From Octopus sinensis (Eukaryota), in NCBI RefSeq assembly GCF_006345805.1, contig NC_043007.1, forward strand, positions 67,394,001 to 67,458,000: a stretch of 64,000 nt of DNA. Direction: 5' to 3'. How positions within the stretch are numbered: the first letter of the stretch is position 1; every line of letters starts with the position of its first letter. The notes under the pieces were generated by a model that was not told where the DNA came from, did no database searches, and was given only the letters and a program-made list of their open reading frames with translations. This document shows positions 5,833 through 58,858 of the stretch, piece by piece. The position numbers and the translations under genes are program-made.

Positions 5833-5865
<33 letters not shown>

Positions 5866-6019
5866 GAGCTTCTTTCAGTTTCCATCTTTCAAATTCACTC
5901 ACAAGGCTTTCCTCAGCTCAAGGCTATAGTAGAAGACACTTACCCTAGGTGCCATGCAGTGAGACTGAATCCAGAACCATGTGGTTGGGAAGCAAGCTTC
6001 TTGCCACACAGCCACGCCT
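5608..6019 (-). mobile_element. SINE, same family as 3903-4292, opposite orientation
   Basis: Reverse complement matches head (cacagccacgcc), core and tail (gcagccatgctggagca) of the 3903 copy. Confidence 0.75.
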
Positions 6020-6020
6020 T

Positions 6021-6091
<71 letters not shown>

Positions 6092-6576
6092 AATAAAAAT
6101 GCAATAGAGCACAATAAAACATTTGGGCAGATAGACTATAAAAGGCAGACAAGAGAAACAGCAATTAGGACAGGCAAAAAAAGACGGGTCATTCGTGGCC
6201 TTCTTTCCTTGGTCAAGTCCCAGAAGTCACGACCGTTTCAAGCAGTTACACTTGATGGTTCGATCTGGTTGCTCCCCAAAAAATCTAAGCTAAGAGCATT
6301 AGACCCCTTTGTAAGGAAGATAGTGAATGTGTATGGCAATATATATATTAAATGTAGCTTGGTACTGTGTGGACTGAGATTCTCATTGATAGACCACTGG
6401 TACATGTAATCATGGCTACTTACATTGTTTTAATTTGGATGGTCACAATTTTGATGTGACATAGGTGTTGTGATTAGCATGGCTGCATGGTTCACAGGAA
6501 ATGCAGCGTTCAGATCCTGCTAGTGATGTCAAATATTTTTTCTACCTTATATGTGTGTGTGTGTATATATAAATCG

Positions 6577-24194: not shown

Positions 24195-25597
24195 CTAGCA
24201 GAATTGCCCGGCGTTGCTCGGGGCTGAATTGCTTGAAAGTACTGTTAATGATTGCACTGAATTATGATGATTATTCAGGCAAATATTGATATAAGCTTAC
24301 GGTGGGAGATAAGGACTTAACGATCAAACGTGTGCCATTGCATTGTTTTGGGGGAACCAAATTTCTGATGAGCATTATAGGGGCACCAACTTTAAGTTTG
24401 AGAAAGTGTGGTGGTAGTCCGGGGTGCTCAAAGGAATTGAGTACCTCTATTGGATAGTTGATGACGTCCTCTGGGTCAGGAGTTGTATCGATAGACTGAT
24501 ATACATAGACTTCCCCAGGAATGAGTTTTAGCATTTCATCATTAATATGGTGAACAGTTTTATTCCTCGGGGCCAGTATAGCCTTTTTGCCAATCCAATC
24601 CATATTCTGATAATTAGCTTGTAGATCTGGGAACACTGCATCTCTGAGATCAGAAGGCGTCTTAACAATGGTACAAATGGAATCGATGGCAATATTACCA
24701 TTTTCATCCCCTGGTATTTTGCCTTCGCCAAGTGCAAGGAGGGTGTGAGGAAATGCTGCTGATGTGATATTACATCGCATATGAGCACGCATATTGGTGT
24801 GAAGTTTGAGAGTTACTTCCGTTTATTTTAAAAAATATGCATTAAAATGGAAAAAATGATGGTAAATTATTTGTAAAATCATAGACTCATCGTAGACGCG
24901 TGCTAATACCCAGAAGGGCTCGATATGAATCACGACTATAAGATACCCGGTTTTGGTTAAACTGCATCGCAAAATGTGGGAGTAGTTAGGAATCTAAATC
25001 GGAGTAGACAGACACACAACCTTTCTTTTATATATAAATATTTTCGTCCTAAAAAACTTTGTATGGATTGAATGGTTACCTCTATGGAAATATATACACG
25101 CACATTATACATACATGTATGTATAGATGAATATATAAATACATTTAAATATCTATATACACTTTTGGGCGATCTTTCTGTTTCTTAGAGATAACTTTAG
25201 ATCTTATTTTCGTGCTAAAAAACTTTGTATGGAGTGAATGGTTACCTCTATGGAAATATATACACACACGTTATACATACATGTGTGCATAGATGAATAT
25301 ATAAATACATTTATATATCTATATACACTTTTGGGCGATCTCTGTGCTACTTAGAGATAACTTTAGATCTTATTTTCGTCCTAAAAAACTTTGTGCGGAG
25401 TGAATGGTTACGTGTATGGAAATATATACACACACATTATACATACATCTGTGTATAGATGAATATATAAATACATTTAAATGTCTATATACACTTTTGG
25501 GCGATCTTTCTGCTACTTGGATATAGGGGCGATGTTCGCTTGTCGTAGCACACGTTTCCGTCGATTTCCGTAAAAATGTAAACACTGAATCGGCCAT

Positions 25598-25657
<60 letters not shown>

Positions 25658-26445
25658 ACATGCATACATACATATACACATAAACCGAGTAAAAAATTTC
25701 AGTTATCTCTCTCTTTCACACATTACTCTCTCTGTCTCTTCACACACACTAACAGAAGCACTTCACTTACACAACATACTGTCTGTCTCTCACACTCCAT
25801 CAAACACACACACACACACACACATGTACATCAATGCGTCCCATGCACGGTAACTTCAAAAGAACTTCCCTCGTCATACAATCGCTTACTCTTAGTCTCT
25901 TTCACTCTCATTACTTATGTAAAAAAATAAAAGTTTTTTATGGAAATCGACGGAAACCTGTACTACGACAAGCGAAGCATCGCCGATATAGGTCTTATAT
26001 TCGTCCTAAAATACTTTCCTGTCACACACTCATGCACACGCACGCACACACACGCACCCTCACACACACACACACTCACACACACGCACGTTAGCTTACA
26101 ATTTTATTTATATATTTGCGTGTCTATGTGTGTAAAGAGGAAGTGGCAGACTGAAAGAGTCACTCACTACAAAAGGTGAATTAGTTTCATTTTATTCCTT
26201 GCACACTGTGTGTGTGCGTGTGGTGTAAAACACATTAAGAAAAGCATTTGACATACACACCAGAATGTGAGTTTTCTGTAAATTTTGCTTAATTGGAGTT
26301 TAAATTTTAAAAAGTGGACCTGGCAAAACCCGATGCATTCTACTCTTAAAAATGCTAAGTAAATTGTAATTGAAGAAATCCTATATTGTAGATTTCTATA
26401 ACTGACAAAGGGAGGCAGATAAAATCTGCCTTTTATAATAAGAGA
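24195..26445 (-). mobile_element. Helitron with both termini and a PIF1-helicase fragment
   Basis: 5' TC at 26445 after A; 3' hairpin CCCGAGCAACGCCGGG followed by CTAG at 24198-24195 before T; ORF 24271-24792 carries ILAPRN...LKLKVGAPIMLIRNL...CNGTRL. Confidence 0.9.
25041..25520. repeat. ~166-bp tandem repeat x3 inside the Helitron
   Basis: ttttcgt(c/g)ctaaaaaactttgt recurs near 25041, 25207 and 25374. Confidence 0.85.
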
Positions 26446-30097: not shown

Positions 30098-30204
30098 TTG
30101 TCTGTCGAAGTTGCAAGAAGAGATGTTCATGAAATAGAATTTACTTCCACGGAAACCTGTGCTTGACATTGTTTGCAATCAACTGCTAAGTCAATCATCC
30201 TCTA

Positions 30205-30207
30205 ATT

Positions 30208-30240
<33 letters not shown>

Positions 30241-30510
30241 GTATATATATAAAAACATAGATTCATTATATATGTGTGTATGCATATATATACGTTAAAC
30301 TTTATAAATTCATTTGTGTGTGTGTCTGTGTATATATAAATTTATAAAGTCTAACATTTTTGTATATACATACATACACACACATACTCATACATACACA
30401 CATGTATGTATGTTACATTTTATAAATTCATATACATATATATGCATGTATATATATGTCTGAGTATGTGTGTGTATATGTATATATTCATATGTCTACA
30501 CACATACCCA

Positions 30511-30541
<31 letters not shown>

Positions 30542-31400
30542 CCACAGATATATAGATACAGTATATATATTATTATAAATATGTATGCACATACATGCAA
30601 GCATACTATTCGCACTCACTCACTCATGAATATGTGTGTGTGGTGAATACAGGAACATGCCCTTGATTTAGCCCTGTCATTAATCCCTCACACTTAATTA
30701 AAATAAATTTATCATATAGAAGTGAAATTACAATTCACACAGTGGCTAACACACATCTAACAATACATTTCCGATTCTTTGCTCCATGGCATTTCTTATG
30801 TTTTAAAACAATGTCTACTGCTTCTCCCCTATCCACTCATTGGAAGATTATCATTGTACGATTTTTGGTTAAATCTATAATCTAGGTTTGGATGATCTTA
30901 ACATACATACAATCATATTCAGGAAACATTTAACATCTAAAATTTTAGCTGGAAAGGTCTGGATTGGTTGATGTTTATTTAATATTTAAGTACATTATGT
31001 TCAAATATTAGGTGTACATTCAAATGCACATATACACAAATATGTTGATATATATATATATATGTATATATACATACACACATATGTGTGTGTGTGTATC
31101 TGTATATATACACATACAGAGATATACAAATATGTAAATACACACACAAATACATGCTGCAACATAAATCGCAAGGGAAGTGGTGCGAATATGCAGTATC
31201 TTGCAAACTTTACGAAATCTATTTCATTCATTTATGGAGTCATTTAAATTCTCCTTGCAAAAAAAAAAGTTTTATTTTTAACATTAAAAATAAAATATTT
31301 TAATATAGTTATGTGTGAGTGTGTGTATATATTACCTTTGAGTGTTTGTGTGTGTATATGTTATATTGTAGACATGCCTGTCTTTGAGTTTAATCTTTTT
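30205..31400. repeat. TA/TG/CA microsatellite-rich region in the probable TFIIA 3' UTR
   Basis: Long alternating purine-pyrimidine tracts. Confidence 0.85.
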
Positions 31401-36269: not shown

Positions 36270-36770
<501 letters not shown>

Positions 36771-36801
36771 TTACAACATGACAAATTATTAAAATGCTAG
36801 A

Positions 36802-36869
36802 AGCTATCAGAATAAGTGATCATCAAATTATGATTTTCAGTCCGCCACTTATACTTCATCATATAAGCT
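36802..36869 (-). ncRNA. Box C/D snoRNA, family 1 variant (SNORD43-related, altered guide), copy A
   Basis: AGCT stem; C ATGATGA; AGTATAAGTGGCGGA before D' CTGA; C' TGATGA; TCACTTATT before D CTGA. Confidence 0.8.
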
Positions 36870-37352
36870 TCATTTAGTAACCTCTAACACCTAATAACAA
36901 TGAGTAAGACAAATGTTCATTAATATCTAATCATGAGAGGACTTCAAAATGCTCACCTTGTGAAACCATTTATAGTTATGAAAATTTTACAATTAATATT
37001 TACTTACAGAATGTAATTTTAATAGCTAACTCTGCACACACATTTGGAAAATAACCTGTGCCTCATATTTCCTGCACACACGATTTTCCAGAACACTTGC
37101 ATTCTACATTTGGTTGCCATGCAATTTAATACATCCTACCTAAACCATATCTTAAAAACTTTACTAAAATGAAGTGAATAAAACAAGTAACATTACACAT
37201 TAACTCTTTAGTTGATAACCCATTATGAGATCCATAATTTACTCTGAATAGAATTTGAAGAGGAAAAAAATGCCAAATATCCAGAAGGTAAATTAAATTC
37301 AAGAGAATGTTTACTAAGCAAACCATATGAAAACCAATTATTGAAATGGTAG

Positions 37353-37422
37353 AAGCCATCAGAATAAGTGATCATCAAATTAAGATTTTCAGTCCGCCAC
37401 TTATAGATCATCATATAAGCTT
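37353..37422 (-). ncRNA. Box C/D snoRNA, family 1 variant, copy B
   Basis: Same boxes and guide (TATAAGTGGCGGA-CTGA) as copy A; aagc/gctt stem. Confidence 0.8.
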
Positions 37423-37484
37423 CATTTAGCAATCACAAAAACTGTAAAATATTATGCAAACCAAGCAGTTTGGATTGAGAAACA

Positions 37485-37544
37485 TCAGATTTCACAAACC
37501 ATGACTCTTTATAAGAATATAATTTTCAGTCTGTCACTCATCAT
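37485..37544 (-). ncRNA. Possible degenerate C/D snoRNA related to family 1
   Basis: ATGATGA-GTGACAGA-CTGA...CTGA; shortened guide and no terminal stem. Confidence 0.35.
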
Positions 37545-37940
37545 CTAGCAACCCCACAAGTTGTAAAACACAGCTCTAAAATATACCATGCCTTACAACT
37601 TTCCTGTACCCTGTCAAAGATTTTACAACCAAAATGCCAACACCACCACTTTAAGATGTCTACTTCACTTTTTGCATTGAACAAAACGATGTGTAATAAT
37701 TGAACCTAACTTCATTGGACATTTCCAGTATCTCAGCCACTATCCCTGTATTCATTATGCTGATAACACACACAATTTTTGAAAGGCTAAAGGGAATTGG
37801 AGAAAACCATGTGTAACATTCCCGATGCCAAGTGCTTATCCACGAAATGTTAGTCTTTCAGGTTTTCAACAGTCAATATTTAGTTTAAGTGATAAACTAC
37901 AGAAGCCAAATTATAAGAAAAATAATTACTGAAAAACTAG

Positions 37941-38004
37941 AAACCATCAGAATAAGTGATCAAACTTATTTTTCAGTCTGCTACAATCTTTATCATATAA
38001 GCTT
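37941..38004 (-). pseudogene. Decayed family 1 variant snoRNA, copy C
   Basis: catcagaataagtgatca and atataagcttca are retained, but box C is mutated (ATGATAA) and the guide is eroded. Confidence 0.65.
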
Positions 38005-38524
38005 CACAAGCTGTAAAATATAACTATCATAATAAGCCTGGCCTCATAATTTCCAGCAATCACAATTTGTAAACCTCATGCTAAGTAAAAGCCTGGTTGC
38101 CCTTGCAACCCTCTCCAGCTGAGCATCCCTAATTTTGTGGGCTTGTAAGTGCTGGTGCTGTGTAAAAGTACCTAGCACACTGGTTGGCATTACGAAGAGC
38201 ATCCAGTCGTAGAAACCATGCCAAAACAGACACGGAGCCGTCAGCTCTTGCCAAACTGCCCAACCCCTGACAGCATGGAAAATGGACATTAAATGATAAT
38301 GATGATGCAAATAATGGTAAAAATTCGAATTAAATTTGCCATACCTCAAAACTTTATTAAAACCAAGTGAATAAAACATTTAACACTTTAATTGATATCC
38401 CATTAAAAGAGCCCAACTTACTCCAAGAGTGAAAAACAAACAAAAAGCCTAGTATCCAGATGGTAAATTAGATTCTTTAGATTAAGTTTAAGCAACCATA
38501 TGAAAACCAATTATTGAAATGGTA

Positions 38525-38594
38525 GAAGCCATCAGAATAAGTGATCATCAAATTATGATTTTCAGTCCGCCACTTATAGATCATCATATAAGCT
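38525..38594 (-). ncRNA. Box C/D snoRNA, family 1 variant, copy D
   Basis: Near-identical to copy B, including about 90 nt of flank. Confidence 0.8.
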
Positions 38595-39034
38595 TCATTT
38601 AGCAATCACAAAAGTTATAAAATATCTCGCAGCCCAAAGTATATTTTTGTTTTGATCTAAAAAACAGAAGCTGTTAGATACCACAAAATGATAGCATCAA
38701 TATCAAGGATGCTTCAAAACCACTCTAATTTCATTTTTAGTGTAACTATCTTTTAATCACTACTAACAGAGATACCCAGCCTTGCTTGGGATTAAAATGG
38801 CATAGTTTCTTTTTTTAATGTTTTACTGGTTTCAGTCGTGTGACTGTGGCCATGTCAGAGCACTGCTGCTGGTCGAACAAACCGACCACTGGATATGTTA
38901 GTACTTATTCTATCAGTGTCTTTTGCCAAACCACTAATTTATGGGAATGCAAACACAGCAACATCGACTGTCAAGCAATGGTGAGGACACAAACACACAC
39001 ATGCATATACACATTTGTGTATGTGCGTATATAC

Positions 39035-39100
39035 ATCACCAGAATCCAAAGTGATCATTAATTGTGATTTTCTGCCTGCCACCTGTATTTCATAATATAA
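39035..39100 (-). pseudogene. Decayed family 1 variant snoRNA
   Basis: cagaatccaaagtgatcattaattgtgattttctgcctgccacctgtatttcataatataa aligns to copy A, with boxes C, D' and D all mutated. Confidence 0.6.
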
Positions 39101-40193
39101 ATACATAATCTGCTTTGAGCACATTTTGTAATTCAAGTTCTTTTGAATTGTAATAAGACATGAAGTTAACTATTAATTAGTTTATTATGAAAATTATTCT
39201 TAACCACTATACAAGTAGTCCTTATACAGAAGCCTTCAACTTTTTACATGACACTTGCCCTACTGAAAAAAGATCAGTCATCAGAAGTTAACCATCCGAG
39301 CAAACATTATTTAAAATACCAGCAAGTCACAAATTATTGTAAAAAATACGTCAAAAACTGCCATAAACCAGTGTTAATGCTCAACCCTTCAGCATTCAGA
39401 TTACTGTCAAATGCAATGCTTAAATATTCATGCGACTTTGATTTAATCATGCATTATTTAATAGCTTTGAGATTTCAATGATGTGATTGTTTATAAAATG
39501 ACTGTAGGGTAGATCTGACCAGTTTGAATGTAAAGCAGGCAGAATATTTTGACTGGATATGACCAGATTAAATGCTTAAAATTTCAGCAATCATTTATAA
39601 CTTACAATTCAGTTAATCGTTGCAATTGAGATACAAACCTTACACTAACTATAACCTGTGCAGAAGCACATATTTTGACCTTCATCATTGCCACACTTTT
39701 TTTATGTTTCCAAGGGACAGAATAATTTTTTGAGGCAGATTTTTTAAAGCTGGACACTCCCCTTATAATCAACCCTCGTCTGTTTCCAAACAAGGTGATA
39801 TTTTCTCCCAGTTTCGTTTTTTTCCAAGAAAACTGCAGGCAAATGACACTGGTTGTCACTAACATGGCAAGACAAGGAGACAAACATATACATACATAAA
39901 GGTTACTTTTCTGTTTCCACCGATGAAACTTACAAGATTTTGGTTTACCTGTGGCTACAGATGACACCTGGCCCAAAAATGCTGTGTAATGGGACTAAAC
40001 CCAAAACCATATAGTTGCAAAGCAAACTCTCGACCATACAGCTAAGCCTGTGTCTTGCATTTTATAAGCCAACAACTTGTGCAATTAAACTATCTTAATG
40101 GAATGATAAAATAAAAACTTTACTACATACTAAAATCATTGCTGATTGTAAAAACACAAACAATTATCCCAAATGAAGCCAGGTGAAATAAAC

Positions 40194-40268
40194 AAGCATA
40201 TCAGTGAAGTGACAATCATTCATGTTTAGGATTTCAGTCCGCCCGTCACTTAAATCATCACATAAGCC
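40194..40268 (-). ncRNA. Box C/D snoRNA, SNORD43/snR70-like, copy E
   Basis: C GTGATGA; guide AGTGACGGGCGGA-CTGA complementary to 18S CCGCCCGUCGCU; 3' part TGATTGTCACTTCACTGA resembles recalled human U43. Confidence 0.88.
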
Positions 40269-40309
40269 TGATCTAGAAACTTCAGCTACCAAAAACCATC
40301 AAAGCTATC

Positions 40310-40780
40310 TTAAGACTTTCGTTACTAACCTGGCCGAAAATTTTTTTGGTTCATAATACCAACCCGGCCTAGAGAACCTATTGTTATTTAAATGTAAATT
40401 TGAACCCAAATCTTGTTGGTACATTCGTTAAAACATGTGATTTCATTTTGTAAATAGTTGGCTTATAGTATCCGACATTGTTTGAAGTGATATCTCAACT
40501 CAGTGAATTTTGGGAGATTTTTTTCCACATCGATTTTTCTTCAACTTTGAAAATGGATAGGAGTTTCATGTTATCAAGCATTGATTCCAAATTTAAAGCT
40601 TTTTCAATGGAAAATAGGGAGATATCGAGAAAAAGAATGAATGAGGTCTTAAAGCACGTGGTGTACAATATGATATTTTTTCATTCGAAACCGAAAGCAG
40701 CGATTCCGAAGAAACAAAGCGGCGATGGCAACAGCAAAGACGATTTTACATTGGAATGAAATAAAACTTTCGTTTAGCAA
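40310..40780 (+). mobile_element. Truncated piggyBac-like 5' end
   Basis: Homologous to 43191-43570 and starts at TTAA. Confidence 0.65.
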
Positions 40781-41034
40781 TCCTTCAAGCCATAAAATAA
40801 CATACAAACTACGGTACAATTTCTGCTAACCACAGCATTAGGACCATCATATGTCAAACCTCATTTTTCCCTCACTGAAGATGAAAGACAAAATTGACCT
40901 TAGAGTGCAGAGAGAATAAATGCTGCAAGATATATCCAATGCACTATCAAATAATAAAATGTGAAACTAAACCAAACAGTGGTCACAAATTTAATACTAA
41001 CAGTGGCTGAACTTTCAAGTTCTGATTTTCATCT

Positions 41035-41100
41035 GGGGATCAGAAAATACTTTAACAACACTGCAATTCAGTGAAGGGATCAAGATATCATCATATCACC
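41035..41100 (-). ncRNA. Box C/D snoRNA, family 2, copy a
   Basis: GGTGA-T-ATGATGA; TTGATCCCTTCA before D' CTGA; D CTGA followed by TCCCC. Confidence 0.75.
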
Positions 41101-42088
41101 TAGCAGAGGAAAACACCACATTTAGTCAATATAATCTAATTACACCCACTCATATTTAGCCCAAATGTTGACAAAAATCTTTGTATCAAATTAAAACATT
41201 TACTCAATATTACACAACATTTATACAAATTCTTAGTTCTCTGAATATTACCATTTTTTCCAATAGCATTTTCCTTTACCCATACAAAAATAAACTTTAG
41301 CTTCAAATTTTGTAGAAGCAACTCATGAAGAGTTTATTGCTCCAATAATTCATTTTATAAGCTAAGTTTTGAAAAAATGTGAAGACACCACCTTAAATGT
41401 CATTCAATTGTTTTGAGCCTTAGAAACTAAAGAACGAATCTTGACATGTCTGTGTGTGACAACACGTGTTGTTAACTGTAAATATACGAAACATTATCAC
41501 TAATATGGCTTTTTCGATGTCGATCTAGTTTTCTTCTTAGAAATTTACATACACAAATGAAGTAAGAATACAGATACATAATTTGCACATTATAAATATG
41601 CAAGGCTTTTCAAGTTTAAAATGCAACATCGTTTTTGTTATCTACTTTCCACACACAAACATACAGAAAAGAAGTATGTATGTGTATTGAAAAAGCCATA
41701 TTAGTGATATTTCAGACCATAGCTGTCTTACAAAACTTATGATTCCATGTTTTAGAATTTCAATGAAACACACTAATGAAAGAATGCAGTTTTGAAAAAG
41801 AAAATGTTTAAGTGTATAAATGCTCGTAGCTGCAGTAGAATGGGTTAGGGACATTATCTAGTTGGCCAACAGATAACATAATAGTAAAACTACAAAAACC
41901 CAGAGTAACTATTTAACATTCTAACACCACAACTGACTATTCCTGTTTAAATATTGCATCTTAGGTACTATAAAAAAATAGAATAATAAAAAAAAAAAAC
42001 TGTAAAAATTCAATAGCTAAGCAGTAAGTCAGACTCCAGCTAGAACTAACAGCTCAAGTTGGTGAAATTATTTCAATGATTTCCATCT

Positions 42089-42154
42089 GGGGATCAGAAA
42101 AGATTTTAACAACAGAACAATTCAGTGAACGGATCAAATTTTCATCATATCACT
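42089..42154 (-). ncRNA. Box C/D snoRNA, family 2, copy b
   Basis: ATGATGA; TTGATCCGTTCA-CTGA; TCTTTT-CTGA; flanks homologous to copy a. Confidence 0.78.
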
Positions 42155-42830
42155 CTGCAGTGGAAAACACCTAACCAAGCACAAGCCTGCCAACAAATTT
42201 CATTTAATTAACCCTTTTGATACCATCTCTGGTTTTATGATACAAACTTATTGTTTTTAAACTATCTTATTCAACCTTCAACATTGCCTAGTTTACATTC
42301 AAAATGGCATCTTATACCTGCCCTACAATGTCATTCTAAAAATATTACAACACATTGAAATCTCCAAGATACAAAATAATGCATAATCAATTCAACACAA
42401 TGTGAGAAAATAAGCTGTAAATTTGACAAAGAAATCTGAATTAAAGGGTTAAAACTTTTCATCAAAATTTCTTAATTTATGTTCCAAAGATCCGTTTAAT
42501 AATGACAAAGGTTTGGTAACAAAAGAGTCTAACAAGGTACTTATATAATGCAACATGACTGTTACTAAACACCTCAAACCAGCAAGTCTTATATTCAAGT
42601 GATTATCTGACTATATATATAAAATTTCAATAGGAAACAAAATTCTAAATAGCCTAATACTGATAAATAAAAAGCTTATTTTACACAACTTTTGTCTTAA
42701 TTATATTAAAAATTGCAACAAGTCACCTCATTCAAAATAACAAGCAATGAGAAGGCAGACATAATTTCTAAAGCACATCCTACAGAAAATGTGCACCATA
42801 TTCAAGTAAAATTTAAATTATCATTCACAC

Positions 42831-42907
42831 AAGCCTATCAGAAAAGTGACATTCATTCAAATTTTGGACATCAGTCCGCCCGTCACTACATATTCATCAT
42901 ATAAGCT
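42831..42907 (-). ncRNA. Box C/D snoRNA, SNORD43/snR70-like, copy F
   Basis: ATGATGA; TAGTGACGGGCGGA-CTGA (13 bp to 18S, one G:U); ATGTCACTTTT-CTGA. Confidence 0.9.
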
Positions 42908-43190
42908 GTTCTCACTCAAAACTGCAAAAACCATATAAGACATAATTTAATTAAGTCCATATTAATTTAAAATGACTTATGAGTAAAAAAAAAAATTCTG
43001 GCAAGATCCATTGCCATTCTGATTCAATTTATTTTGAAAAGAATTTAGTTAATTAATTTTACCATTATTCAACAGGGGCTTGGAACATAAAATGAAATTT
43101 TAGGCTTGAATTTTCATCATTTTGTAGATCACTGCACCTCATTCAAATACATGACTACCATGTTCAGAAATCCAGTTCCCTTCAATATCC

Positions 43191-44490
43191 TTAACCCTTT
43201 CTATACTAACCTGGCTGAAAACTTTTTTGTTACATAAGTCCAACCCGGCCAAGAGTACCCATTGTTATTTAAATGTAAATTTGAACACAAATCTCGTTAG
43301 TACATTCGTGAAAACACCTGATTTCACTTTGTAAATAGTTGAGTTATTGTATCCAACATTGTTTGGTATGATATTTGAACTCGCTGAATTTTGGGAGAGG
43401 AATTTCATGCTATCAAGCAGTGATTCTGAATTTGAAGGTTTTTCAACTGAAGATATGGAGACACTGAGAAAAAGAATGAATGAGGCACAAAAGCACGTGA
43501 TGAACGAGAATCGGATATCTCTGTATCCGAAAGCAGCAACAGCGAGGATGATTTTACACTAGAATGGAGTAAAAACTTAAAAAATTGTTTTTATCAAATT
43601 TTCTGAGAAGACAGCGTCTACTCACTTTCTCAGGAAGCGAAACCACTAGACTTTTTTTTTTCAGCATGCTTGTTTAAAGTGATCATTGCGAAAACAAACC
43701 GTTACACAGAATGTAAACAAGCTGGAAAAAAAAGATAGTTTGTGGTTTCCCACAGCCTTAGAAGAAATACGGGCATTTTTTTTTGCCATAAATATTATTA
43801 TGGGTATTAGACTGTTACCCAGAATTACAAATTACTGGAGCTATCAGGAACCTTTTGGCAATCAGTATGTTCCAATATTATGACCTGAATACAACCTGTG
43901 AAACTGAACCAGTATTTACATGTGCGAGATATAATAGTACCCCAGTACATGGAGAACTAAACTTTGACCCCTTATAAGACCCCTCATCAACTGCATTCAA
44001 AATGCATATAATACATTTTACAACCCTGAGACTTATCCATCGACGAGGGCATGGTGGGTTATAAAGGAAGGTTTTGACAATATATGCCAGGAAATCCCAT
44101 GAAATGGGGGATCAAAGTTTGGAAAATTTGTGAAGCAAATACTGGGTACTGCTGTGGATTTAGCTTTTATACAGGGAATGGCCTAGGGTATGATGTGGTC
44201 TAGAATTTATCATGACCATACCATAAGCAGGGCCATGTATTTTTTGACCGATATTTTAGTTCAGTCAAACTTGCAGCGGATTTAGAACCTTGGCAACGTA
44301 TATGTGTGCTAGTAATTGCTAGCAGAAAAGGGCTGCTGTTGGATATAAAAGCAAAATTTTAAAAAAAGAGGTGAAATAATCCAACAGCAGAAAAATTTTC
44401 TATCTACCAGTGCACAACCGTGTAGATGAAAATGGCACCCCATTTGTGAACCTTGATTATAACAGGTACATGGGCGGTGTGGATCGGCTG
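43191..44490 (+). mobile_element. Degraded piggyBac transposon (transposase pseudogene)
   Basis: TTAA-CCCTTT start; remnants SIDEGMVGYKGR*QYMPGNPMKWGIKVWKICEANTGYC, FDRYFSSV and DYNRYMGGVDRL match piggyBac DDD motifs. Confidence 0.88.
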
Positions 44491-44554
44491 AGATATTATC
44501 CTGGATTTACCTATAATTAGAGTCACTTTGAGACAAAAACTGCATTACTCACTA

Positions 44555-44621
44555 GGTGATCAGAAAATATATTTTATCCACAATCTAATTCAGTGAACGG
44601 ATCAAGTCTCATCATGTCACC
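44555..44621 (-). ncRNA. Box C/D snoRNA, family 2, copy c
   Basis: Perfect GGTGA/TCACC terminal stem; C ATGATGA; ACTTGATCCGTTCA-CTGA; D CTGA. Confidence 0.82.
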
Positions 44622-44736
44622 TTTGGGGAAACCCTCACCATACACCATCAATATTGATCTATACTTCCTCAAACTTTGATTTCTATACTCAAATTTAAAA
44701 CCCAACTCCACTTACAAATTCAAACAGTCAGTATGC

Positions 44737-44948
44737 TTTCTGCCAGCGCCGCCCTGACTGGCCTCGTGCAGGTGGCACGTAAAAAGCACCCACTACACTC
44801 ACGGAGTGGTTGGCGTTAGGAAGGGCATCCAGCCGTAGAAACATTGCCAGATCAGACTGGGGCTGGTGCAGCTCACTGGCTTCCCAGACCCCAGTTGAAC
44901 CGTCCAGCCCATGCTAGCATGGAAAGCGGACGCTAAACAATGATAATG
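44737..44948 (+). mobile_element. Young SINE-like insertion ((TGA)n-tailed family) with 7-bp TSD
   Basis: agtatgc at 44730-36 and 44949-55; the paralogous copy near 45350 is an empty site. Confidence 0.85.
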
Positions 44949-45174
44949 AGTATGCATAATACAAGCACACTGTTCTGTGCATTAAATTCAATTGATAATC
45001 TAGTGATGTGCACAATTCTTCTATATCAAAATTTTGTTGCATACCCAATTGAATATTAGCTGATGACTCATTTTCTATGGTAATGTTTAAACAAAATTTA
45101 AATATTTTTACATTTTGTTCAACCTGGATTTACCTATAATTAGAGTCACTTTGAGACAACTGCATGATTCACTA

Positions 45175-45241
45175 GGTGATCAGAAAAGATATTTTATCCA
45201 CAATCTAATTCAGTGAACGGATCATGTCTCATCATGTCACC
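45175..45241 (-). ncRNA. Box C/D snoRNA, family 2, copy d
   Basis: Nearly identical to copy c within a ~250-bp duplication. Confidence 0.82.
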
Positions 45242-45738
45242 TTTGGGGAAACTCCCCACCATACACCATCAATATTGATCTACACTTCCTCAAACTTTGA
45301 TTTCTATACTCAAATTTAAAACCCAACTCCACTGACAAATTCAAACAGCCAGTATGCATAATACAAGCACACCAAAGACAGTTACGGTAATACTAGAGTC
45401 ATTTACTTAAATCAATAAATAGTCCTTTCTGCTATGGGCACAAGGCCTGAAATTTTGAGGGAGATGATAAGCCAATTACACTGACCTCTCACCACCCCCA
45501 GTGCTCACCAGACACTATTTTATCAACACCAAAAGGAATTATAACTCAGAATGCAAAGTTGGACGAAATGCCACTAATCATTTTGTCTGGCATGCCAACA
45601 ATTCTGCCACTTTGCTGCCTTAATTCAACAAACAATGGAAACTAAATCACCTCTAGATGTGATAGAAAACAAGTGAACCACTAACAGGCAATAAACAGTA
45701 CAATAACTATGTACTACTGCAAGTGCAACGCAACAAAC

Positions 45739-45816
45739 AAGCCTATCAGAAGAGTGACACTCATCATGATTAAGGACATCAGACCGCCCGTCACTAAGTT
45801 TTCATCATGTAAGCTT
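45739..45816 (-). ncRNA. Box C/D snoRNA, SNORD43/snR70-like, copy G
   Basis: AAGC stem; ATGATGA; TTAGTGACGGGCGGT-CTGA; C' ATGATGA; GTGTCACTCTT-CTGA. Confidence 0.9.
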
Positions 45817-46240
45817 GATCTATGTCTACTGGCATTATCTCTATATTGCATAGCTACATACATCAGAGTGAAGGCAATTTGAGACCCATCATTATATACA
45901 TATAAAACCATGCTCCCTGAACTCCTTTTTACTAAAATAAGCAAAAAGTGTGTGTGTGTGTGGGGGGTGTTCTGATTGAACAGGCTACACATCTTGCATA
46001 GACAATGTCTTTATACAACTGAAAATTTCCCCCATAACCATGTTAATGTCCATATCATGAACAAAAAACTAGATAAAGTAAATCTGGTACAAAGCCCCAA
46101 GAGAATGTTTTCCATTAAGCAGCACATTCAAAAGGGGTTGGGGTGCACAAAATACATGAAAATACAGTAATAGCTCTCCTCTCCCTTTGTTTTTAAATCC
46201 CAGAAGAATATTAAGAGGCCATATTTTCCTATTAAAGTTA

Positions 46241-46327
46241 TGCCATCAGTCTCAAGAACCAGAATGTATACCCTCCATGTATGTGGCAAAATCAGGTTAT
46301 ATACAAGCTAGAGCTCATCCTCTGGCA
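46241..46327 (-). ncRNA. Box C/D snoRNA, family 3, copy a
   Basis: TGCCA/TGGCA stem; C-like AGGATGA; D' CTGA; ATTCTGGTTCTTGAGA before D CTGA. Confidence 0.72.
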
Positions 46328-46796
46328 AACTGAATTGAACCCAACATAGATTTTGTTCACTCCCTACAACTCATTGACCACCACCTACCTTTCTACATTT
46401 TTTTGGATTGATTCAATAACAAGAAACTGGTTGTTTCCATGACAGTGACAGTTACTAAAACAGGAGGAGGAGGAGAAAGCTAATGGATTGTGTGTGTGCG
46501 TGCTTGTTTTGTTTTTATGTGTTGTGGAATATAGATATAACGAAATATGCCAGCAAAAAGCCTTGCATATTTGTTCTTACCTGCTTCATCCACAAACTTC
46601 CAAGCATAAAACAGAAAACAGTAATAGCCAAATCTTATAAAATTTTAAATTACTCTATATCCCAAATCCTGGGGAAACAACACTGCCAATCCAAGAATCC
46701 CACAACCAAGTTTAATCATAAAAGATTTACTCTCCCCTCCCTTTGTTTTTACATCCCAGAAGAATATTAAGAGGCCATATTTTCCCATTAAAGATA

Positions 46797-46881
46797 TGCC
46801 ATCAGTCTCAAGAACCAGAATGTATACCCTCCATGTATGTGGCAAAATCAGGTTATACCAGCTAGAGCTCATCCTTTGGCA
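46797..46881 (-). ncRNA. Box C/D snoRNA, family 3, copy b
   Basis: Same boxes, stem and D guide as copy a. Confidence 0.72.
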
Positions 46882-47481
46882 AACTGAATTGAACCGAACA
46901 TAGATTCTGATATGATTTTGTTTACTTCTAATGAGTTTCCTCATTCCCTCCCTACAACTCATTGACCACCACCTACCTTTCTTCACCAACACCCTAGCAG
47001 CCATTACTCTCTCTACCCTTCCCAAGCTGTCCCCACCATCTTTTATCTTTCTTACCAACTGAAGCCCAGTTATCCCCACCTCCACGACAAACTGCTTCTG
47101 ACATTTCTATAACGCTTTTTTCACCTCTTAATTATTCGGCATTCTTTTGGATTGACTCCACAAGAAATCGGTTGTTTCTGACAAGACAATTCACTTCAGA
47201 TATCTTCATGACCTTGTGACAATGACAGCTACTAAAACGGGAGGAGGAGGAGGAGAAAGCCAATGGGTTGTGGAATATAGATACAACGAAATTATGCCAG
47301 CAAAAAGCCTTGCATATTCTTACCTGCTTCATCTACAAATTTCCAAGCAGAAAACAGAATACAGTAATAGCCAAATCTTACAAATTTATTTTAAATTACT
47401 CTATATCCCAAATCCTGGGGAAACAACACTGTCAGCCCAAGAATCCCACAACCAAGTTTGGTCATAACAAAGATAAAGATA

Positions 47482-47566
47482 TGCCATCAGTCTCAAGAAC
47501 CAGAATGTATACCCTCCATGTATGTGGCAAAATCAGGTTATACAAGCTAGAGCTCATCCTTTGGCA
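47482..47566 (-). ncRNA. Box C/D snoRNA, family 3, copy c
   Basis: Same boxes, stem and D guide; D box lies 72 nt upstream of a candidate ttgtttccccag acceptor. Confidence 0.72.
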
Positions 47567-48958
47567 AACTGAATTGAACCTAACAGATTTTGTTCACTTC
47601 TAATGATATTCGTCATTCCCTCCCTACAACTCATTGACCACCACCTACCTTTTTTCAACAACACCCTAGCAGCCACCTTCCCAAGCTGTCCCCACCATCT
47701 TTTATCTTTCTTACCAACAAACTGAAGCCCAGTTATTCTCACCTCCACAACAAACTGCTTCTGCCCCTTCTATAACACTTTTTTAACCTCTTAATATTCA
47801 GTATAATAACTCAAAATGTAAATATGGACAAACTGTCACTAAGCATTTTGTCCTGTTCCATTACACTTCAGTCTGCAAGTTACTCAGTGATCCCACTAGT
47901 GCTCAGCTCACTGTGTAATGTGGTTGACATCAGGAAGGGCATTTAGCTATAGAAACCATGCTATGGTAGATATTGGGGTTCATTGGTTTCTGTGGAATAG
48001 TTCAGCCAATGAATATTCTATGACATTAAAACCTTGGTGACTGCAAATTCATTAATTTTGCCCTACTGATTGAGATAAAAACGAACAAAATATTGGGGGA
48101 GAATGTAACATCATTAAATAAGACACACACAACCCATCTAATTGCTTATGTCAAAATATGACATACCATCTCCCCCAAGAAATGGTTTGTTCTTCATTGT
48201 GGCAAATTCAGGCCATGAAAAACTTTTATCCTTTTTAAGTGAAAACCTTAAATTACCACAGTGAAAATCAAATCTTACTTATACATTCCAACTAGCAGAG
48301 TTAACCCAAAAATGGTTATCCAATCAAAAGCAAATAGTTATTTGTACTGTTCTTTCAAACCTAAGATTAAGAATAATTTATTTAAGAAATAAAAATGGAT
48401 GATATGGTAATACCAACCTCCTTATAAATAATTCTTATAAACAGACAGCCGGCATCTCACTTTATAAATTGCTACCAAAATTGATGAATTTGCTGTAACC
48501 TAAGTTTTTAATGTTATAGAATATCCAATAAATCAAAATTGCAAATACTGCTATGAACTCCAATATCTACCTTGGCATGGTTTCTATAGTTAAATGCCCT
48601 TCCTAATGTCAACCACTTTACACAGTGAACTGGGTACTTCTAGGGTGTGGGGGAGTATTAGCACTAGCGAGGTAACTTGAAGATTGAGTTGGGGTGCACA
48701 ATTAAGGAACCAAAGTGTGATAGAACAGGTGTCTTGCAGAAGAGGAGATACATGATTTCCTCACCTGGAAAAAACGAAAAATGGTACTTGGTGAACATAA
48801 AAGAAACTAGAGATAGACAGCTGGAAAGAAAAGATAGGGAGTCAAGTGTGCTGAACCATTCCTTAACTTAAAATGCAACTGATCGAGGCATTTCAGGTAC
48901 ATTAAGTTAGGCAGGTCCAAATCACAAGTGGGAAGATTCCATTACTTCCCACCAAAGA

Positions 48959-49043
48959 TATGCCATCAGTCTCAAGAACCGGAATGTGTTCTCCATGTAT
49001 GACAAAATCAGCTGATACAAATTAGAGCTCATCCTCTGGCATA
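48959..49043 (-). ncRNA. Box C/D snoRNA, family 3, copy d (most diverged)
   Basis: 7-bp TATGCCA/TGGCATA stem; boxes and GGTTCTTGAGA guide conserved while the interior has diverged; 60 nt from the exon 3 donor. Confidence 0.75.
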
Positions 49044-49069
49044 GATCTTATTAAATATCACCATATTTA

Positions 49070-49291
<222 letters not shown>

Positions 49292-56400: not shown

Positions 56401-58858
56401 ACATTTTCTAAAGTTGATTGTTTGAAGATTGCAGCAAATATGTAGAATAGCTGCAGGTTTTATACATTTCATTGATGAGTGCTTTTGTTCTGAAAATGGT
56501 CATTAGTCCATTTAGGTTTCACACAATTGCTCATTCATTTACTTTAATTTATTGATTGATAAGGTTAAGTAAATTGTAGCAACAGTACATATATCTGCTA
56601 GTAGCTATTGGAATCATTTTAGACAAGAATAAGAGAATTTCTAAATTATTTTGCTATACATCGGAGTTAATACCATTCAGCTGCTAATATATCTAATTTC
56701 TTTATAAAATCCTAGGGATAATGATGAGAATTAGAATATAATAACAGTAAAATAATGTTTAAGTTATGGAATTAATTTATATGTATGAGTCATCTGATTG
56801 GTTAATTTAGTTTTGTTTGAACACAAGATTGATATTACTGTTATAAAATGCTTGGGATTGGAAACTGTTTTGTTTGTATCCTATTTCAGTGAAGGTGCAT
56901 GGCTCAGTGTTTAGTGAGTCAGGCTCACAATCATGAGGTAGTGAGTTTGATTCCTGGACCCAGCTGTGTGTTGTGTTCTTGAACAAGACACTTTATTTCA
57001 TGTTGCTCCAGTTCACTCAGCTGTAGAAATGAGTTGCAACATCACTGGTGCCCAGCTGTATTGGCCTTTGCTTTTCCCTTGGATAACTCGGTGGCATGGA
57101 GAGGGGGAGGTATGCATAGGTGATTGCTGGTCTTCCATAAACAACTTTGCCTGGATTTGTGCCTCGGAGGGTAACTTTCTAGGTGCAATCTCACAGTCAT
57201 TCATGACTGGAGGGGGTCTTTACCCATTTCCCTTTTTCAGTGAATATTCTTATCTGTACTTCCAAACTATGGTTCCACCTGGCTATGGTTATAATTAGGG
57301 AATACAGATAGATAGCCCATTTGGATATTAAATGGGAAATCACCCACCTTTACATAATGCAGTAGAGTCCTGTATCTCTCCTTCAGTAAGACACTTGTTT
57401 CTGTCTGTCTATCATATTTTAGCTTCTCAACAGCTGGTATAAAGCTGCCTCCCTCTCTACTACAGCCTCAGAGGGTGCTTTTTTGTTGTGTGAATTTACT
57501 AGTATTGGCTGCAAGAAAAAAAAGCATCCAGTACATTCTGTAAAGTGATTGGCATTAGAAAAGGCATCGACTGTAGAAACCATACCAAAGCAGACTAAAG
57601 CTTTACACAATTCTCTAGCTTATCAGTTCCTTTTGAATAACCCAATGCATGGAAGATGGACATTAAATGAGGATAGTGAAAATTTATTTGGTTAACAATG
57701 CACATGATTCTATTTTAAGTGAAAGTGCCTGTATTTATTTACACAATATGATTTACTATTTGGTGGTGCATTCCTATGCAGTAAGATACATTATCACCAT
57801 GGTGTTTGCTTTTTCTATGCTGGCATGAGTTGAACACGATTTCTTGTAGTAGCTCATGGTCAAGTGCCCTTCCTGGTGCCAACACTTGATTTTCAAGCAA
57901 AATATCCCACTGGTCTTCGTGTGTCAAACTTCGTAACTATGGAGCATAAACATCACTGTTGCCCAAGTGGTGTCAATGCAAAGACACATATGTGTGTGTG
58001 TATAATATATATATATATATATGCATATAGATGTGTGCACACACACACATATATATACATGCACACGCAGTGGGTTTCTGTACAATTTCTGTTTACTAAA
58101 TTTCATTCATGAAGTATTAGTTGATTTGAGGCTATAAAAAAAAACTAACTCTGCAGTGGGATTGAACCTGAAAACCACTTAAGCTGCAAAGCTAACTGCA
58201 AAACTACACATCCACCTTTATTGGCATATTACTGAAATGATTAGCAATAAAAAAAATATAATAAAATAAAACCTTTCATTCATTGTTAACAGCATTGGTC
58301 TTAAAACATCTGTATCAGTGAAACAACTTACAAGAAATTAACTTCCTGAAAAATACCTTCCCAAGAAACAAATAGCTGTAACTTTAACCTTGTGCAAATA
58401 TAAGGTAGACAAAATCAAAATCCACTGTTACTTTGCCTTACTATAAAGATCTGGTTGACACAGTATCTTGTCACTTTAGAATGGTTTCCAATATTATACC
58501 CTGCACATTTCTCCCTCAGCTTATTCGTGGGCCTTGTGACTCCTATTCATGGTTCCTTTTTTTTTTCTTTATTTTTTTATTTTTAGAATGTATTTAAGAA
58601 TTGGAGGTTCTTCCTGTCAACAAACCTTTTAGTTGCCTTTTTACAGCCTTCAACTATACTAAGCAACTATTGTAAAACTGGGCTGCACAAAAGCAACTAT
58701 GCATATTTTTCAACTAAAGACATGGACAAATAATTACTATTATGGCTGCCTATCAACTTATAGAAAAATTAGGATGACCTATAAAAATTTCAAAATAGGA
58801 CACAAGAAAAATCTTTAAAAGTAGCGGAATGTAATGGTGCAGTCATTTTTATTTTATA

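What the first reader, a model, noticed from the sequence alone, without database searches (positions are those of the whole stretch)
36802..38594. Rewired SNORD43 paralogs: 18S guide lost, internal stem compensated
Seen: copies A, B and D replace AGTGACGGGCGGA with TAAGTGGCGGA, leaving only about 5 bp to the 18S site, yet keep all four boxes. The canonical copies pair (A)AGUGAC with GUCACU(U) upstream of box D; the variants instead pair AUAAGUGG with UCACUUAU, so both sides changed together. Inference: selection on structure, and possibly a new target containing CCGCCACUUAUA. The D-side guide could also pair about 9 nt with the recalled LSU sequence GAAUAAGUGG (tentative).
Basis: partly seen in the sequence, partly recalled or inferred. 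Interest (0 to 1): 0.7.

Follow-up and report, generated by a model that had tools for sequence, protein, structure and literature searches.

The report
Octopus SNORD43 paralogs lacking 18S guide
Three small nucleolar RNA genes in an intron of the octopus ribosomal protein S23 gene descend from the snoRNA that guides methylation of 18S rRNA, lost that guide through a 4-base deletion, and are still conserved in three octopus species, so they are probably working snoRNAs whose target is unknown, which is an ordinary way for such "orphan" snoRNAs to arise.

Summary
The window is Octopus sinensis. Copies A, B and D lie on the minus strand in the 12.7-kb last intron of RPS23. They are box C/D snoRNAs with consensus C, D', C' and D boxes and a terminal stem. 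Compared with three canonical SNORD43-type copies in the same intron, a 4-nt deletion (AGUG[ACGG]GCGGA) cuts pairing with the 18S Cm1703-type site from 12 bp to 5 bp.

The variants are not an assembly artefact. Identical copies occur in O. vulgaris and two intact orthologues in O. bimaculoides. Between species, all 6 substitutions fall outside the boxes, terminal stem and 12-nt D' element (0/90 versus 6/54 sites). Sibling copies that lost a box decay at the flank rate.

The "compensated stem" reading is only partly supported. A stem between the D' element and the D spacer is predicted, but variant and canonical halves pair equally well in swapped combinations. The outer stem positions also drift in O. 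bimaculoides.

The 9-nt match to LSU AAUAAGUGG is real but at chance level (18% of shuffles). The D' element has no target in conserved rRNA.

Verdict: a conserved orphan offshoot of SNORD43 made by cis-duplication plus a guide indel. Target unknown; modest interest.

The parts
36800..36871 (-). varA: 72-nt box C/D snoRNA. D' antisense element at 36841-36852, D-side spacer at 36811-36819. It lies 384 nt upstream of the RPS23 last-exon acceptor.
   Evidence: Identical in O. vulgaris. The O. bimaculoides orthologue is L003 17832.
37352..37423 (-). varB: 72-nt box C/D snoRNA that differs from varD by 1 nt, in the D'-C' loop.
   Evidence: Its O. bimaculoides orthologue (L003 ~16957) has a 9-nt deletion that removes box C.
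38525..38596 (-). varD: 72-nt box C/D snoRNA. Box C 38581-38587, D' element 38566-38577, box D' 38562-38565, box C' 38545-38550, spacer 38536-38544, box D 38532-38535.
   Evidence: The O. bimaculoides orthologue is L003 15010, with 2 differences in 71 nt.
37940..38005 (-). degC: a decayed variant-type copy (box C AUGAUAA, guide GUAGCAGA). Its O. bimaculoides orthologue keeps the variant guide but has a CUGU D box.
   Evidence: It diverges at the flank rate.
37483..37549 (-). A second decayed copy (AGAUGAUGA-GUGACAGA-CUGA...) whose 3' half is not recognisably related to the family.
   Evidence: It shows 5/73 substitutions against O. bimaculoides, the same as its flanks.
40193..40270 (-). can3: canonical SNORD43-type copy with the 18S C1703-type guide AAGUGACGGGCGGA|CUGA.
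   Evidence: Rfam SNORD43 scores 22.4 bits (gathering score 45), with the guide and UGAUUGUCA matching the consensus. It is 70/70 identical in O. bimaculoides.
42830..42908 (-). can2: canonical SNORD43-type copy.
   Evidence: (19.9 bits).
45738..45817 (-). can1: canonical SNORD43-type copy.
   Evidence: (21.5 bits).
36417..49102 (-). Last intron of RPS23 (uS12), 12,686 nt. It holds all 12 snoRNA-like units: 3 canonical, 3 variant, 2 decayed and 4 of a second family.
   Evidence: Exons were placed by tblastn and splice sites were read. A spliced cDNA (L004) joins exon 3 directly to the last exon. The protein is an exact match to Octopus RPS23.
36270..36416 (-). RPS23 last coding exon, including the stop codon.

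Best explanation
Copies A, B and D are functional box C/D snoRNA genes. They arose by tandem (cis) duplication of the octopus SNORD43-type snoRNA inside the last intron of RPS23. A 4-nt deletion in the D' antisense element then removed the guide for the 18S Cm1703-equivalent site.

They are transcribed with RPS23 and released from its 12.7-kb last intron (inferred). They assemble into snoRNPs on their consensus C/D and C'/D' motifs (inferred). They act through the invariant 12-nt element AUAAGUGGCGGA upstream of box D' on an RNA that is not part of the conserved rRNA core. For now they are orphan snoRNAs.

The stem between the 5' part of that element and the short D-side spacer is inherited from canonical SNORD43-type copies, through the shared core AAGUG/CACUU. 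It is not a freshly compensated structure. The 9-nt D-side spacer is probably not a guide.
For: **Shown**
- The anatomy is complete: all four boxes, a 6-bp terminal stem, the same strand as the host gene, and a ribosomal-protein host.
- Descent from the canonical copies: shared 5' and 3' ends and GCGGACUGA in the same intron.
- Presence in three species: 3 identical copies in O. vulgaris and 2 intact orthologues in O. bimaculoides, with copy-specific diagnostic bases kept.
- Constraint between species: 0/90 substitutions in boxes, terminal stem and D' element against 6/54 elsewhere (Fisher p=0.0023). The probability of 0/90 at the flank rate of 8.5% is 3e-4.
- Constraint between paralogues: D versus B differ at 1/71 sites inside the snoRNA and 31/213 in the flanks (p=0.001).
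- Internal control: decayed sister copies carry box-destroying changes and evolve at 7.5% against 8.5% for the flanks.
- The 18S guide is lost, and the positive control works: the canonical guide finds its site in 46/46 loci.
- With the terminal stem and boxes constrained, the internal stem is the minimum-energy fold in all intact copies.

**From the literature**
- Cis-duplication, followed by indels that turn guide snoRNAs into orphans or give them new targets, is a described route (PMC2653536).
Against: - No expression, snoRNP-association or methylation data could be consulted.
- Whole-body divergence of the intact variants (4.2%, 6/142) is not significantly below the flanks (8.5%, p=0.09).
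- Invariance of the D' element alone (0/24 sites) is not significant between species (p=0.12).
- Gene conversion confined to the snoRNA body could inflate paralogue similarity.
- varB's O. bimaculoides orthologue lost box C, so not every copy is needed.
- No target was found.
- Twelve snoRNA units in one intron departs from the predominant one-snoRNA-per-intron arrangement in animals (PMC11028025), so processing efficiency is uncertain.
Confidence: 0.55

Rival explanations
1. The variants are non-functional relics. On this view they are recently disabled SNORD43 duplicates that look conserved only because the species are close and because gene conversion homogenises the tandem copies.
For: - Overall substitution rate is 4.2% against 8.5% for the flanks, p=0.09.
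- The array shows birth and death, with at least 2 decayed copies in O. sinensis and 4 in O. bimaculoides.
- One O. bimaculoides copy that lacks box C is still 50/50 identical to varD over its 3' part. That fits conversion or a very recent loss.
- Birth-and-death plus conversion is documented for tandem snoRNA arrays (PMC8789076 abstract).
Against: - The D, B and A lineages predate the O. bimaculoides split and keep lineage-specific diagnostic bases, so homogenisation is incomplete.
- All 6 substitutions avoid the 45 functionally defined positions (p=0.002).
- D/B flanks have diverged 14.6% plus indels, while the snoRNA differs at 1/71.
- Truly unconstrained sister copies have lost boxes.
- Conversion among neutral copies would not protect the boxes in the long run.
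Confidence: 0.15
2. The variants were retargeted to the large-subunit rRNA. On this view the D-side spacer UCACUUAUU, upstream of box D, guides 2'-O-methylation of the second A of UAA in LSU ...GAAUAAGUGGG....
For: - The spacer is 9/9 complementary (1 G.U) to AAUAAGUGG.
- The 18-mer containing that site was found in at least 120 eukaryotic rDNA contigs and lies on the sense strand of LSU rRNA (L007).
- Canonical D spacers pair with that site over only about 6 bp (my own hand alignment).
Against: - 545 of 3000 shuffled 9-mers (18%) find an equally good site in one rRNA set.
- The whole C'-to-D spacer is only 9 nt. From recalled work on archaeal and eukaryotic C/D RNPs, guides sit in spacers of about 12 nt or more.
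- Both intact O. bimaculoides copies carry a substitution at spacer positions 2 or 3 from box D, and the spacer evolves at about the neutral rate (2/18).
- From memory, this adenosine is not a known 2'-O-methylation site in yeast or human. This was not checked here.
Confidence: 0.1
3. Selection acts on the fold rather than on a guide. On this view the D'-element:D-spacer stem was rebuilt by compensatory change after the deletion. The RNA would then work as a structured particle, for example as a protein sink, a regulator of the host intron, or a competitor of canonical SNORD43.
For: - A stem of 7 Watson-Crick pairs plus 1 G.U is predicted in the variants, against 6-7 pairs in the canonical copies.
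- Shuffled spacers rarely match it (0.05-3%).
- It is the minimum-energy fold when the terminal stem and boxes are constrained.
- GUCAC(U) in the D spacer is invariant among old canonical paralogues and is present in the Rfam SNORD43 consensus.
Against: - Swapped combinations pair as well or better (-9.4 and -7.2 against -7.1 kcal/mol), so no compensation was required.
- The gained outer pairs are the positions that change in O. bimaculoides: one becomes A.C and one becomes U.G. Stem probability falls to 0.65 and 0.47.
- In unconstrained folds of two of the three O. sinensis copies, the new UAUAAG pairs instead with the 5' leader.
- This is a single evolutionary event, with no independent covariation.
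Confidence: 0.12

Closest known systems
SNORD43 / U43 (Rfam RF00221), the box C/D snoRNA that guides 18S rRNA Cm1703 in human and is hosted in RPL3 (PMC6466398, PMC10932220)
   Same: - The canonical octopus copies carry the same antisense element (UGACGGGCGGA) with the target C at the 5th position upstream of box D'.
- They also share the D-side motif UGAUUGUCA with the Rfam consensus.
- The variants share the family's 5' and 3' ends, box layout, intron and strand.
   Different: - The variants lack 4 nt of the antisense element and pair only 5 bp with the 18S site.
- They get no SNORD43 hit even at E<=10 in a 171-nt search.
- The canonical copies score only 20-22 bits, against a gathering score of 45.
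- The host gene is RPS23, not RPL3.
- Many copies share a single intron.
Orphan box C/D snoRNAs produced by cis-duplication and guide divergence, as described for chicken and other vertebrate snoRNA paralogues (PMC2653536), and tandem orphan arrays such as SNORD116 (PMC8789076)
   Same: - Intragenic tandem duplication.
- An indel in the guide that abolishes the ancestral target.
- Retained boxes under purifying selection.
- Birth-and-death turnover of copies.
   Different: - This is a small array (3 intact copies) inside a ribosomal-protein gene intron of a cephalopod.
- There are no imprinting or tissue-expression data.
- The ancestral guide copies persist next to the orphans in the same intron.
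Intronic snoRNA clusters, meaning several snoRNAs in one intron (PMC11028025)
   Same: Several snoRNAs co-exist in one host intron on the host's strand.
   Different: There are twelve units from two families in one 12.7-kb intron of a protein-coding gene. The review describes one snoRNA per intron as the predominant animal arrangement.

Membership tests
Box C/D snoRNA (class) | Box C (RUGAUGA) near the 5' end and box D (CUGA) near the 3' end, brought together by a short terminal stem | tested here: met
   All three copies have AUGAUGA and CUGA. The terminal stem is GAAGCU/AGCUUC in A and GAAGCU/GGCUUC, with a U.G pair, in B and D.
Box C/D snoRNA (class) | Internal D' and C' boxes | tested here: met
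   D' is CUGA and C' is UGAUGA, both perfect consensus, 11 nt apart.
Box C/D snoRNA (class) | In animals, an intronic location on the sense strand of a host gene, often a ribosomal-protein gene | tested here: met
   The copies lie in the last intron of RPS23 on the same strand.
Box C/D snoRNA (class) | A stable ~70-nt RNA bound by fibrillarin, NOP56, NOP58 and SNU13 | not testable with these tools
   No expression or RNP data were available.
SNORD43 (RF00221) | Score at or above the Rfam gathering threshold (45 bits) | tested here: not met
   Canonical copies score 19.9-22.4 bits. The variants give no SNORD43 match at E<=10.
SNORD43 (RF00221) | An antisense element of at least ~10 bp to 18S around the C1703 equivalent, with that C opposite the 5th nt upstream of box D' | tested here: not met
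   The variants pair 5 bp in register. The canonical copies pair 11-12 bp with ACCGCCCGUCGC in 46/46 rDNA loci. The feature is met for the canonical copies only.
SNORD43 (RF00221) | Common descent with bona fide SNORD43-type copies | tested here: met
   The copies share AGCUUAUAUGAUGA, GCGGACUGA and CACU..CUGAUAGCUU with the canonical copies in the same intron. This similarity is alignment-based, at about 65-70% identity.
Orphan snoRNA | No antisense element matching rRNA or snRNA at a plausible modification site | tested here: inconclusive
   The D' element has no conserved target in 120 eukaryotic rDNA loci and no target in the window. Octopus rRNA expansion segments, snRNAs, tRNAs and mRNAs could not be searched.

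The most novel reading that the evidence does not exclude
The 4-nt deletion created a new working guide. On this reading the invariant element (C)UAUAAGUGGCGGA directs 2'-O-methylation of, or binding to, a cephalopod-specific target containing UCCGCCACUUAU(A). That target could lie in an rRNA expansion segment or spacer, an snRNA, a tRNA or an mRNA. This would be a dated case of a snoRNA gaining a new function within octopods.
Probability: 0.3. Interest if true: 0.5.

Novelty: new member of a known kind. Interest (0 to 1): 0.3.

Why it matters
If the variants are expressed, they are a clean example of how an orphan snoRNA is born. The ancestral guide copies, the derived copies and the decaying copies sit side by side in one intron. 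The causal mutation, a 4-nt deletion, is still readable, and the event can be dated with other cephalopod genomes.

The locus also shows an unusually crowded intron: twelve snoRNA units from two families in one RPS23 intron. That arrangement would need processing that does not depend on one snoRNA per spliced intron.

It does not open a new class of mechanism. The route of duplication, guide indel and retention as an orphan is already described in vertebrates.

Tried and rejected
- **Rfam at gathering thresholds:** no match anywhere in the window. At permissive thresholds most hits are microsatellite artefacts, such as mir-297 and mir-3149.
- **Reaching other cephalopods through the downstream neighbour TFIIA-L:** the search returned only short fragments from other taxa.
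- **Reaching them through the ORF that covers the RPS23 last exon:** the best hits (P0232-P0234) lie on Logan contigs of an unidentified taxon. All of these contigs begin 157 nt upstream of the exon, so they hold no snoRNA region.
- **Metagenome scan for the variant sequence:** 0 hits.
- **A target in cis:** the complement of the D' element occurs in the window only as the antisense of the snoRNAs themselves. Matches with up to 3 mismatches are at chance level, 16 against 10.6 expected.
- **An apparent 10-bp rRNA match, CCCGCCGUUUACCCG:** it lies on the antisense strand of LSU rDNA and was discarded once the loci were oriented.
- **The 13-mer AGTGGCAGACTGA on the + strand at 26142:** there is no box C nearby, so it is a chance match.
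- **tRNA genes and tandem repeats in the window or region:** none found.
- **My first flank-divergence estimate (25-38%):** it was inflated by misaligned and gapped columns. I replaced it with substitution-only counts inside BLAST alignments, which give 8.5%.
- **The count of structure pairs:** not used, because MAFFT places the 4-nt gap after box C. The canonical and variant stems are therefore not in homologous columns, and the variant stem is a single event in any case.
Full report
**Where the window comes from and what hosts the feature**

A tblastn search with a recalled human RPS23 sequence placed three coding exons on the minus strand, at about 49499-49340, 49223-49103 and 36416-36270 (splice sites read). 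The spliced 143-aa protein is an exact match to the RPS23 (uS12) protein shared by Octopus bimaculoides, O. sinensis and O. vulgaris.

Looking up that protein returned the gene with its introns from three chromosome assemblies. Window 33270-54859 is 100% identical to the O. sinensis locus L002, 97-99% identical to O. vulgaris L001, and about 80-91% identical to O. bimaculoides L003.

A fourth record, L004, is a spliced Octopus RPS23 cDNA that joins exon 3 directly to the last exon. The interval 49102-36417 is therefore removed as one 12,686-nt intron. Every snoRNA-like unit discussed here lies in that intron, on the same strand as RPS23.

**Check of the observation**

Read on the minus strand, the finding's interval holds three nearly identical 72-nt units: varA 36800-36871, varB 37352-37423 and varD 38525-38596. 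The order of elements is:
- terminal-stem 5' strand GAAGCU
- UAU
- box C AUGAUGA
- three variable nucleotides
- AUAAGUGGCGGA
- box D' CUGA
- an 11-nt loop
- box C' UGAUGA
- UCACUUAUU
- box D CUGA
- one nucleotide
- terminal-stem 3' strand (A/G)GCUUC

The 17-mer across the guide and D' box occurs three times, against 0.09 expected.

Three further units upstream in the intron, at 40193-40270, 42830-42908 and 45738-45817, carry AGUGACGGGCGG(A/U) before CUGA. Rfam's SNORD43 model matches them only weakly, at 19.9-22.4 bits against a gathering score of 45. The alignment nevertheless shows that the antisense element UGACGGGCGGAC and the D-side UGAUUGUCA coincide with the family consensus. Human SNORD43 guides 18S Cm1703 and lies in RPL3 (PMC6466398; PMC10932220).

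To test the guide with real sequence, I fetched 120 eukaryotic rDNA contigs from metagenomes. One of them, L007, was confirmed as SSU-5.8S-LSU. The canonical element pairs 11-12 contiguous bp (one G.U) with ACCGCCCGUCGC in all 46 contigs that contain that part of 18S, with the C opposite the fifth nucleotide upstream of D'. The variant element is best read as the canonical one minus four nucleotides: AGUG[ACGG]GCGGA. It keeps only five pairs in register. A shifted register gives eight pairs with two G.U, one of them at the fifth position.

**Are the variants real genes or debris?**

*Presence in other species.* The same three variants are present and identical in O. vulgaris. O. bimaculoides has two intact ones, at L003 15010 and 17832. 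Flank alignments give these orthologies:
- varD with Ob 15010
- varA with Ob 17832
- varB with Ob ~16957
- the decayed copy C with Ob 15970

*Substitution rates.* I counted substitutions only inside BLAST alignments.

| Sequence class (O. sinensis vs O. bimaculoides) | Substitutions | Rate | p vs flanks |
|---|---|---|---|
| Flanks | 306/3605 | 8.5% | n/a |
| Canonical copies | 6/213 | 2.8% | 0.002 |
| Intact variants | 6/142 | 4.2% | 0.09 |
| Decayed copies | 10/134 | 7.5% | 0.87 |

An earlier estimate of 25-38% flank divergence was inflated by gapped and misaligned columns and should be disregarded.

*Where the changes fall.* Position is more telling than rate. None of the six variant substitutions hits a box, the terminal stem or the 12-nt D' element (0/90 sites). 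All six fall in linkers, the loop, the D-side spacer or the nucleotide after box D (6/54 sites; Fisher p=0.0023). Zero changes in 90 sites has probability 3e-4 at the flank rate.

*Paralogues.* varD and varB duplicated before the species split. They differ at 1/71 positions inside the snoRNA and at 31/213 positions, plus 27 gap columns, in the alignable flanks (p=0.001). varA keeps a diagnostic A in the 3' stem strand that its O. bimaculoides orthologue shares, so the copies have not simply been homogenised.

*Internal control.* The array contains its own control for what unconstrained copies look like:
- Copy C has AUGAUAA for box C in O. sinensis and CUGU for box D in O. bimaculoides.
- An O. 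bimaculoides copy at 17301 has degenerate boxes throughout.
- The O. bimaculoides orthologue of varB has lost box C through a 9-nt deletion.

Taken together, this is birth-and-death evolution with purifying selection on a subset of copies.

**The internal stem**

Unconstrained minimum-energy folds of the canonical copies contain AGUGAC paired with GUCACU. Those of varA and varD instead pair the new UAUAAG with the 5' leader CUUAUA. That alternative duplex is as stable as the proposed stem, -7.0 against -7.1 kcal/mol. When the terminal stem is enforced and boxes C and D are kept unpaired, as in an assembled k-turn, the stem between the D' element and the D spacer becomes the minimum-energy structure in every intact copy. 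Its pair probabilities are 0.96-0.99 in O. sinensis and fall to 0.65 and 0.47 in the two O. bimaculoides copies. Shuffled spacers rarely reach the observed duplex energy (0.05-3%). So the complementarity is real.

The data do not show compensation. The variant guide pairs with a canonical spacer at -9.4 kcal/mol, and a canonical guide pairs with the variant spacer at -7.2. Both are as good as or better than the variant with itself, because the core AAGUG/CACUU is common to both types. The two outer pairs that distinguish the variant stem are exactly the positions substituted in O. bimaculoides: U to C gives an A.C mismatch, and A to G gives a U.G pair. The spacer as a whole changes at 2/18 sites, which is indistinguishable from the neutral rate.

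All three O. sinensis variants descend from one event, so there is no independent covariation to count. GUCAC(U) is invariant among the old canonical paralogues and appears in the vertebrate-based Rfam consensus. The short D-side spacer of SNORD43-type RNAs therefore probably has some conserved role. Pairing with the 5' part of the guide is a reasonable candidate for that role, but this remains inference.

**Targets**

With the rDNA loci oriented to the rRNA sense strand, the variant D' element has no conserved partner. The best sites have 7-8 pairs with 2-3 G.U, and allowing one mismatch over 10-12 positions gives only sporadic, non-conserved hits. The canonical control is recovered everywhere. 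A tempting 10-bp match seen before orientation lies on the antisense strand of the LSU gene.

The D-side spacer UCACUUAUU is fully complementary (one G.U) to LSU AAUAAGUGG. However, 18% of composition-matched shuffles find an equally good site in a single rRNA set. The spacer is only 9 nt long, and it drifts in O. bimaculoides. I therefore rate this as coincidence.

No complementary site occurs in the RPS23 transcript or elsewhere in the window. Octopus rRNA expansion segments and spacers, snRNAs, tRNAs and mRNAs could not be searched with these tools, so "orphan" is provisional.

**Comparison with what is known**

- **Class.** The variants meet every sequence-level criterion of box C/D snoRNAs.
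- **Family.** They fail both operational criteria for SNORD43 membership, the Rfam score and the 18S antisense element, although they clearly descend from SNORD43-type copies.
- **Evolutionary route.** Intragenic duplication followed by an indel that converts a guide snoRNA into an orphan, or gives it a new target, is described for vertebrate snoRNAs (PMC2653536). Birth-and-death with conversion is described for tandem snoRNA arrays (PMC8789076).
- **What is less usual.** The genomic setting stands out. Twelve snoRNA-like units of two families share one intron of a protein-coding gene, whereas animals predominantly follow one snoRNA per intron (PMC11028025).

**Verdict**

The specific claim of a compensated stem is not demonstrated, and the LSU match is at chance level. 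No target is known. I could not sample cephalopods beyond the genus Octopus and had no expression data. These are the main gaps. Interest is modest: this is a new orphan member of a well-understood class, with a nicely legible origin.

Noticed in passing
window 45174-45242, 44554-44622, 42089-42153, 41034-41101 (minus strand): Four copies of a second box C/D snoRNA family are interleaved with the SNORD43-type copies in the same RPS23 intron. The best Rfam match is SNORD2, at 30.2 bits against a gathering score of 37. The D' element GAUCCGUUCA|CUGA pairs 10-11 bp with LSU UGAAUGGAU(U/C)AACGAG, but with a G.U at the fifth position. The 41.1-kb copy has C at that guide position.
   Followed up: partly
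window 36417-49102 (minus strand): Twelve snoRNA-like units sit in one 12.7-kb intron of a protein-coding gene. A spliced cDNA joins the flanking exons directly. This implies processing that does not rely on one snoRNA per intron.
   Followed up: partly
L004 (GCA_016612955.1, JAENPV010000087.1, 436 nt): An intron-less Octopus RPS23 cDNA, 99-100% identical to the O. sinensis and O. vulgaris exons, sits in a Campylobacter fetus assembly. There it is named '30S ribosomal protein S12'. This is contamination of a bacterial assembly.
   Followed up: partly
L001 17776-20769 compared with window 36872-37352: O. vulgaris has about 3 kb between varB and varA, where O. sinensis has about 0.5 kb. This is an insertion or deletion of roughly 2.5 kb inside the array.
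   Followed up: no
L125-L128 (Logan contigs from SRR6063089, SRR6063270, SRR6063402, SRR6062978): Contigs from an unidentified taxon have an RPS23 last exon that is 81% identical to Octopus and encodes the same peptide. All of them begin at the same base, 157 nt upstream of the exon, as if a repeat breaks the assembly there.
   Followed up: no
L003 ~13356-13400: A run of N in the O. bimaculoides assembly truncates a further variant-type copy. Only ...GGUGAUCACUUAUUCUGAUGGAUUC remains, so the copy number in that species is a lower bound.
   Followed up: no
window 8339-30097 (+ strand); beyond about 52.1 kb (+ strand): Two neighbouring genes were noted. TFIIA large subunit (GTF2A1) lies convergent with RPS23; its N-terminal and C-terminal exons were recognised and hits carry Pfam PF03153. 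An Ac45/ATP6AP1-like gene (PF05827, PF20520) lies head-to-head with RPS23.
   Followed up: partly
window 30200-31200, 57970-58070, 5800-6100, 25000-25750: (CA)n and (TA)n microsatellites produce the top sub-threshold Rfam hits (mir-297, mir-3149, mir-466). A weak SCARNA7 hit at 25497-25748 (35 bits, gathering score 65) lies in such sequence. These are probably artefacts.
   Followed up: no
window 38044-38379 and ~44760-44950 (minus strand); 40309-40703 versus 43190-43545: Interspersed repeat copies lie between the snoRNAs. They include a SINE-like element with an open frame of 111 aa and a ~400-nt repeat pair at 73% identity.
   Followed up: no
window 24271-24792 (minus strand): A 173-aa ORF looks by eye like the C-terminal part of a PIF1/Helitron-type helicase. 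It was not checked with any tool.
   Followed up: no
window 39601-39696 (minus strand): My regex scan flagged another possible box C/D unit (AAUGAUGA ... CUGA with a 5-bp terminal stem) between can3 and varD. It has no family resemblance to the others and was not examined.
   Followed up: no
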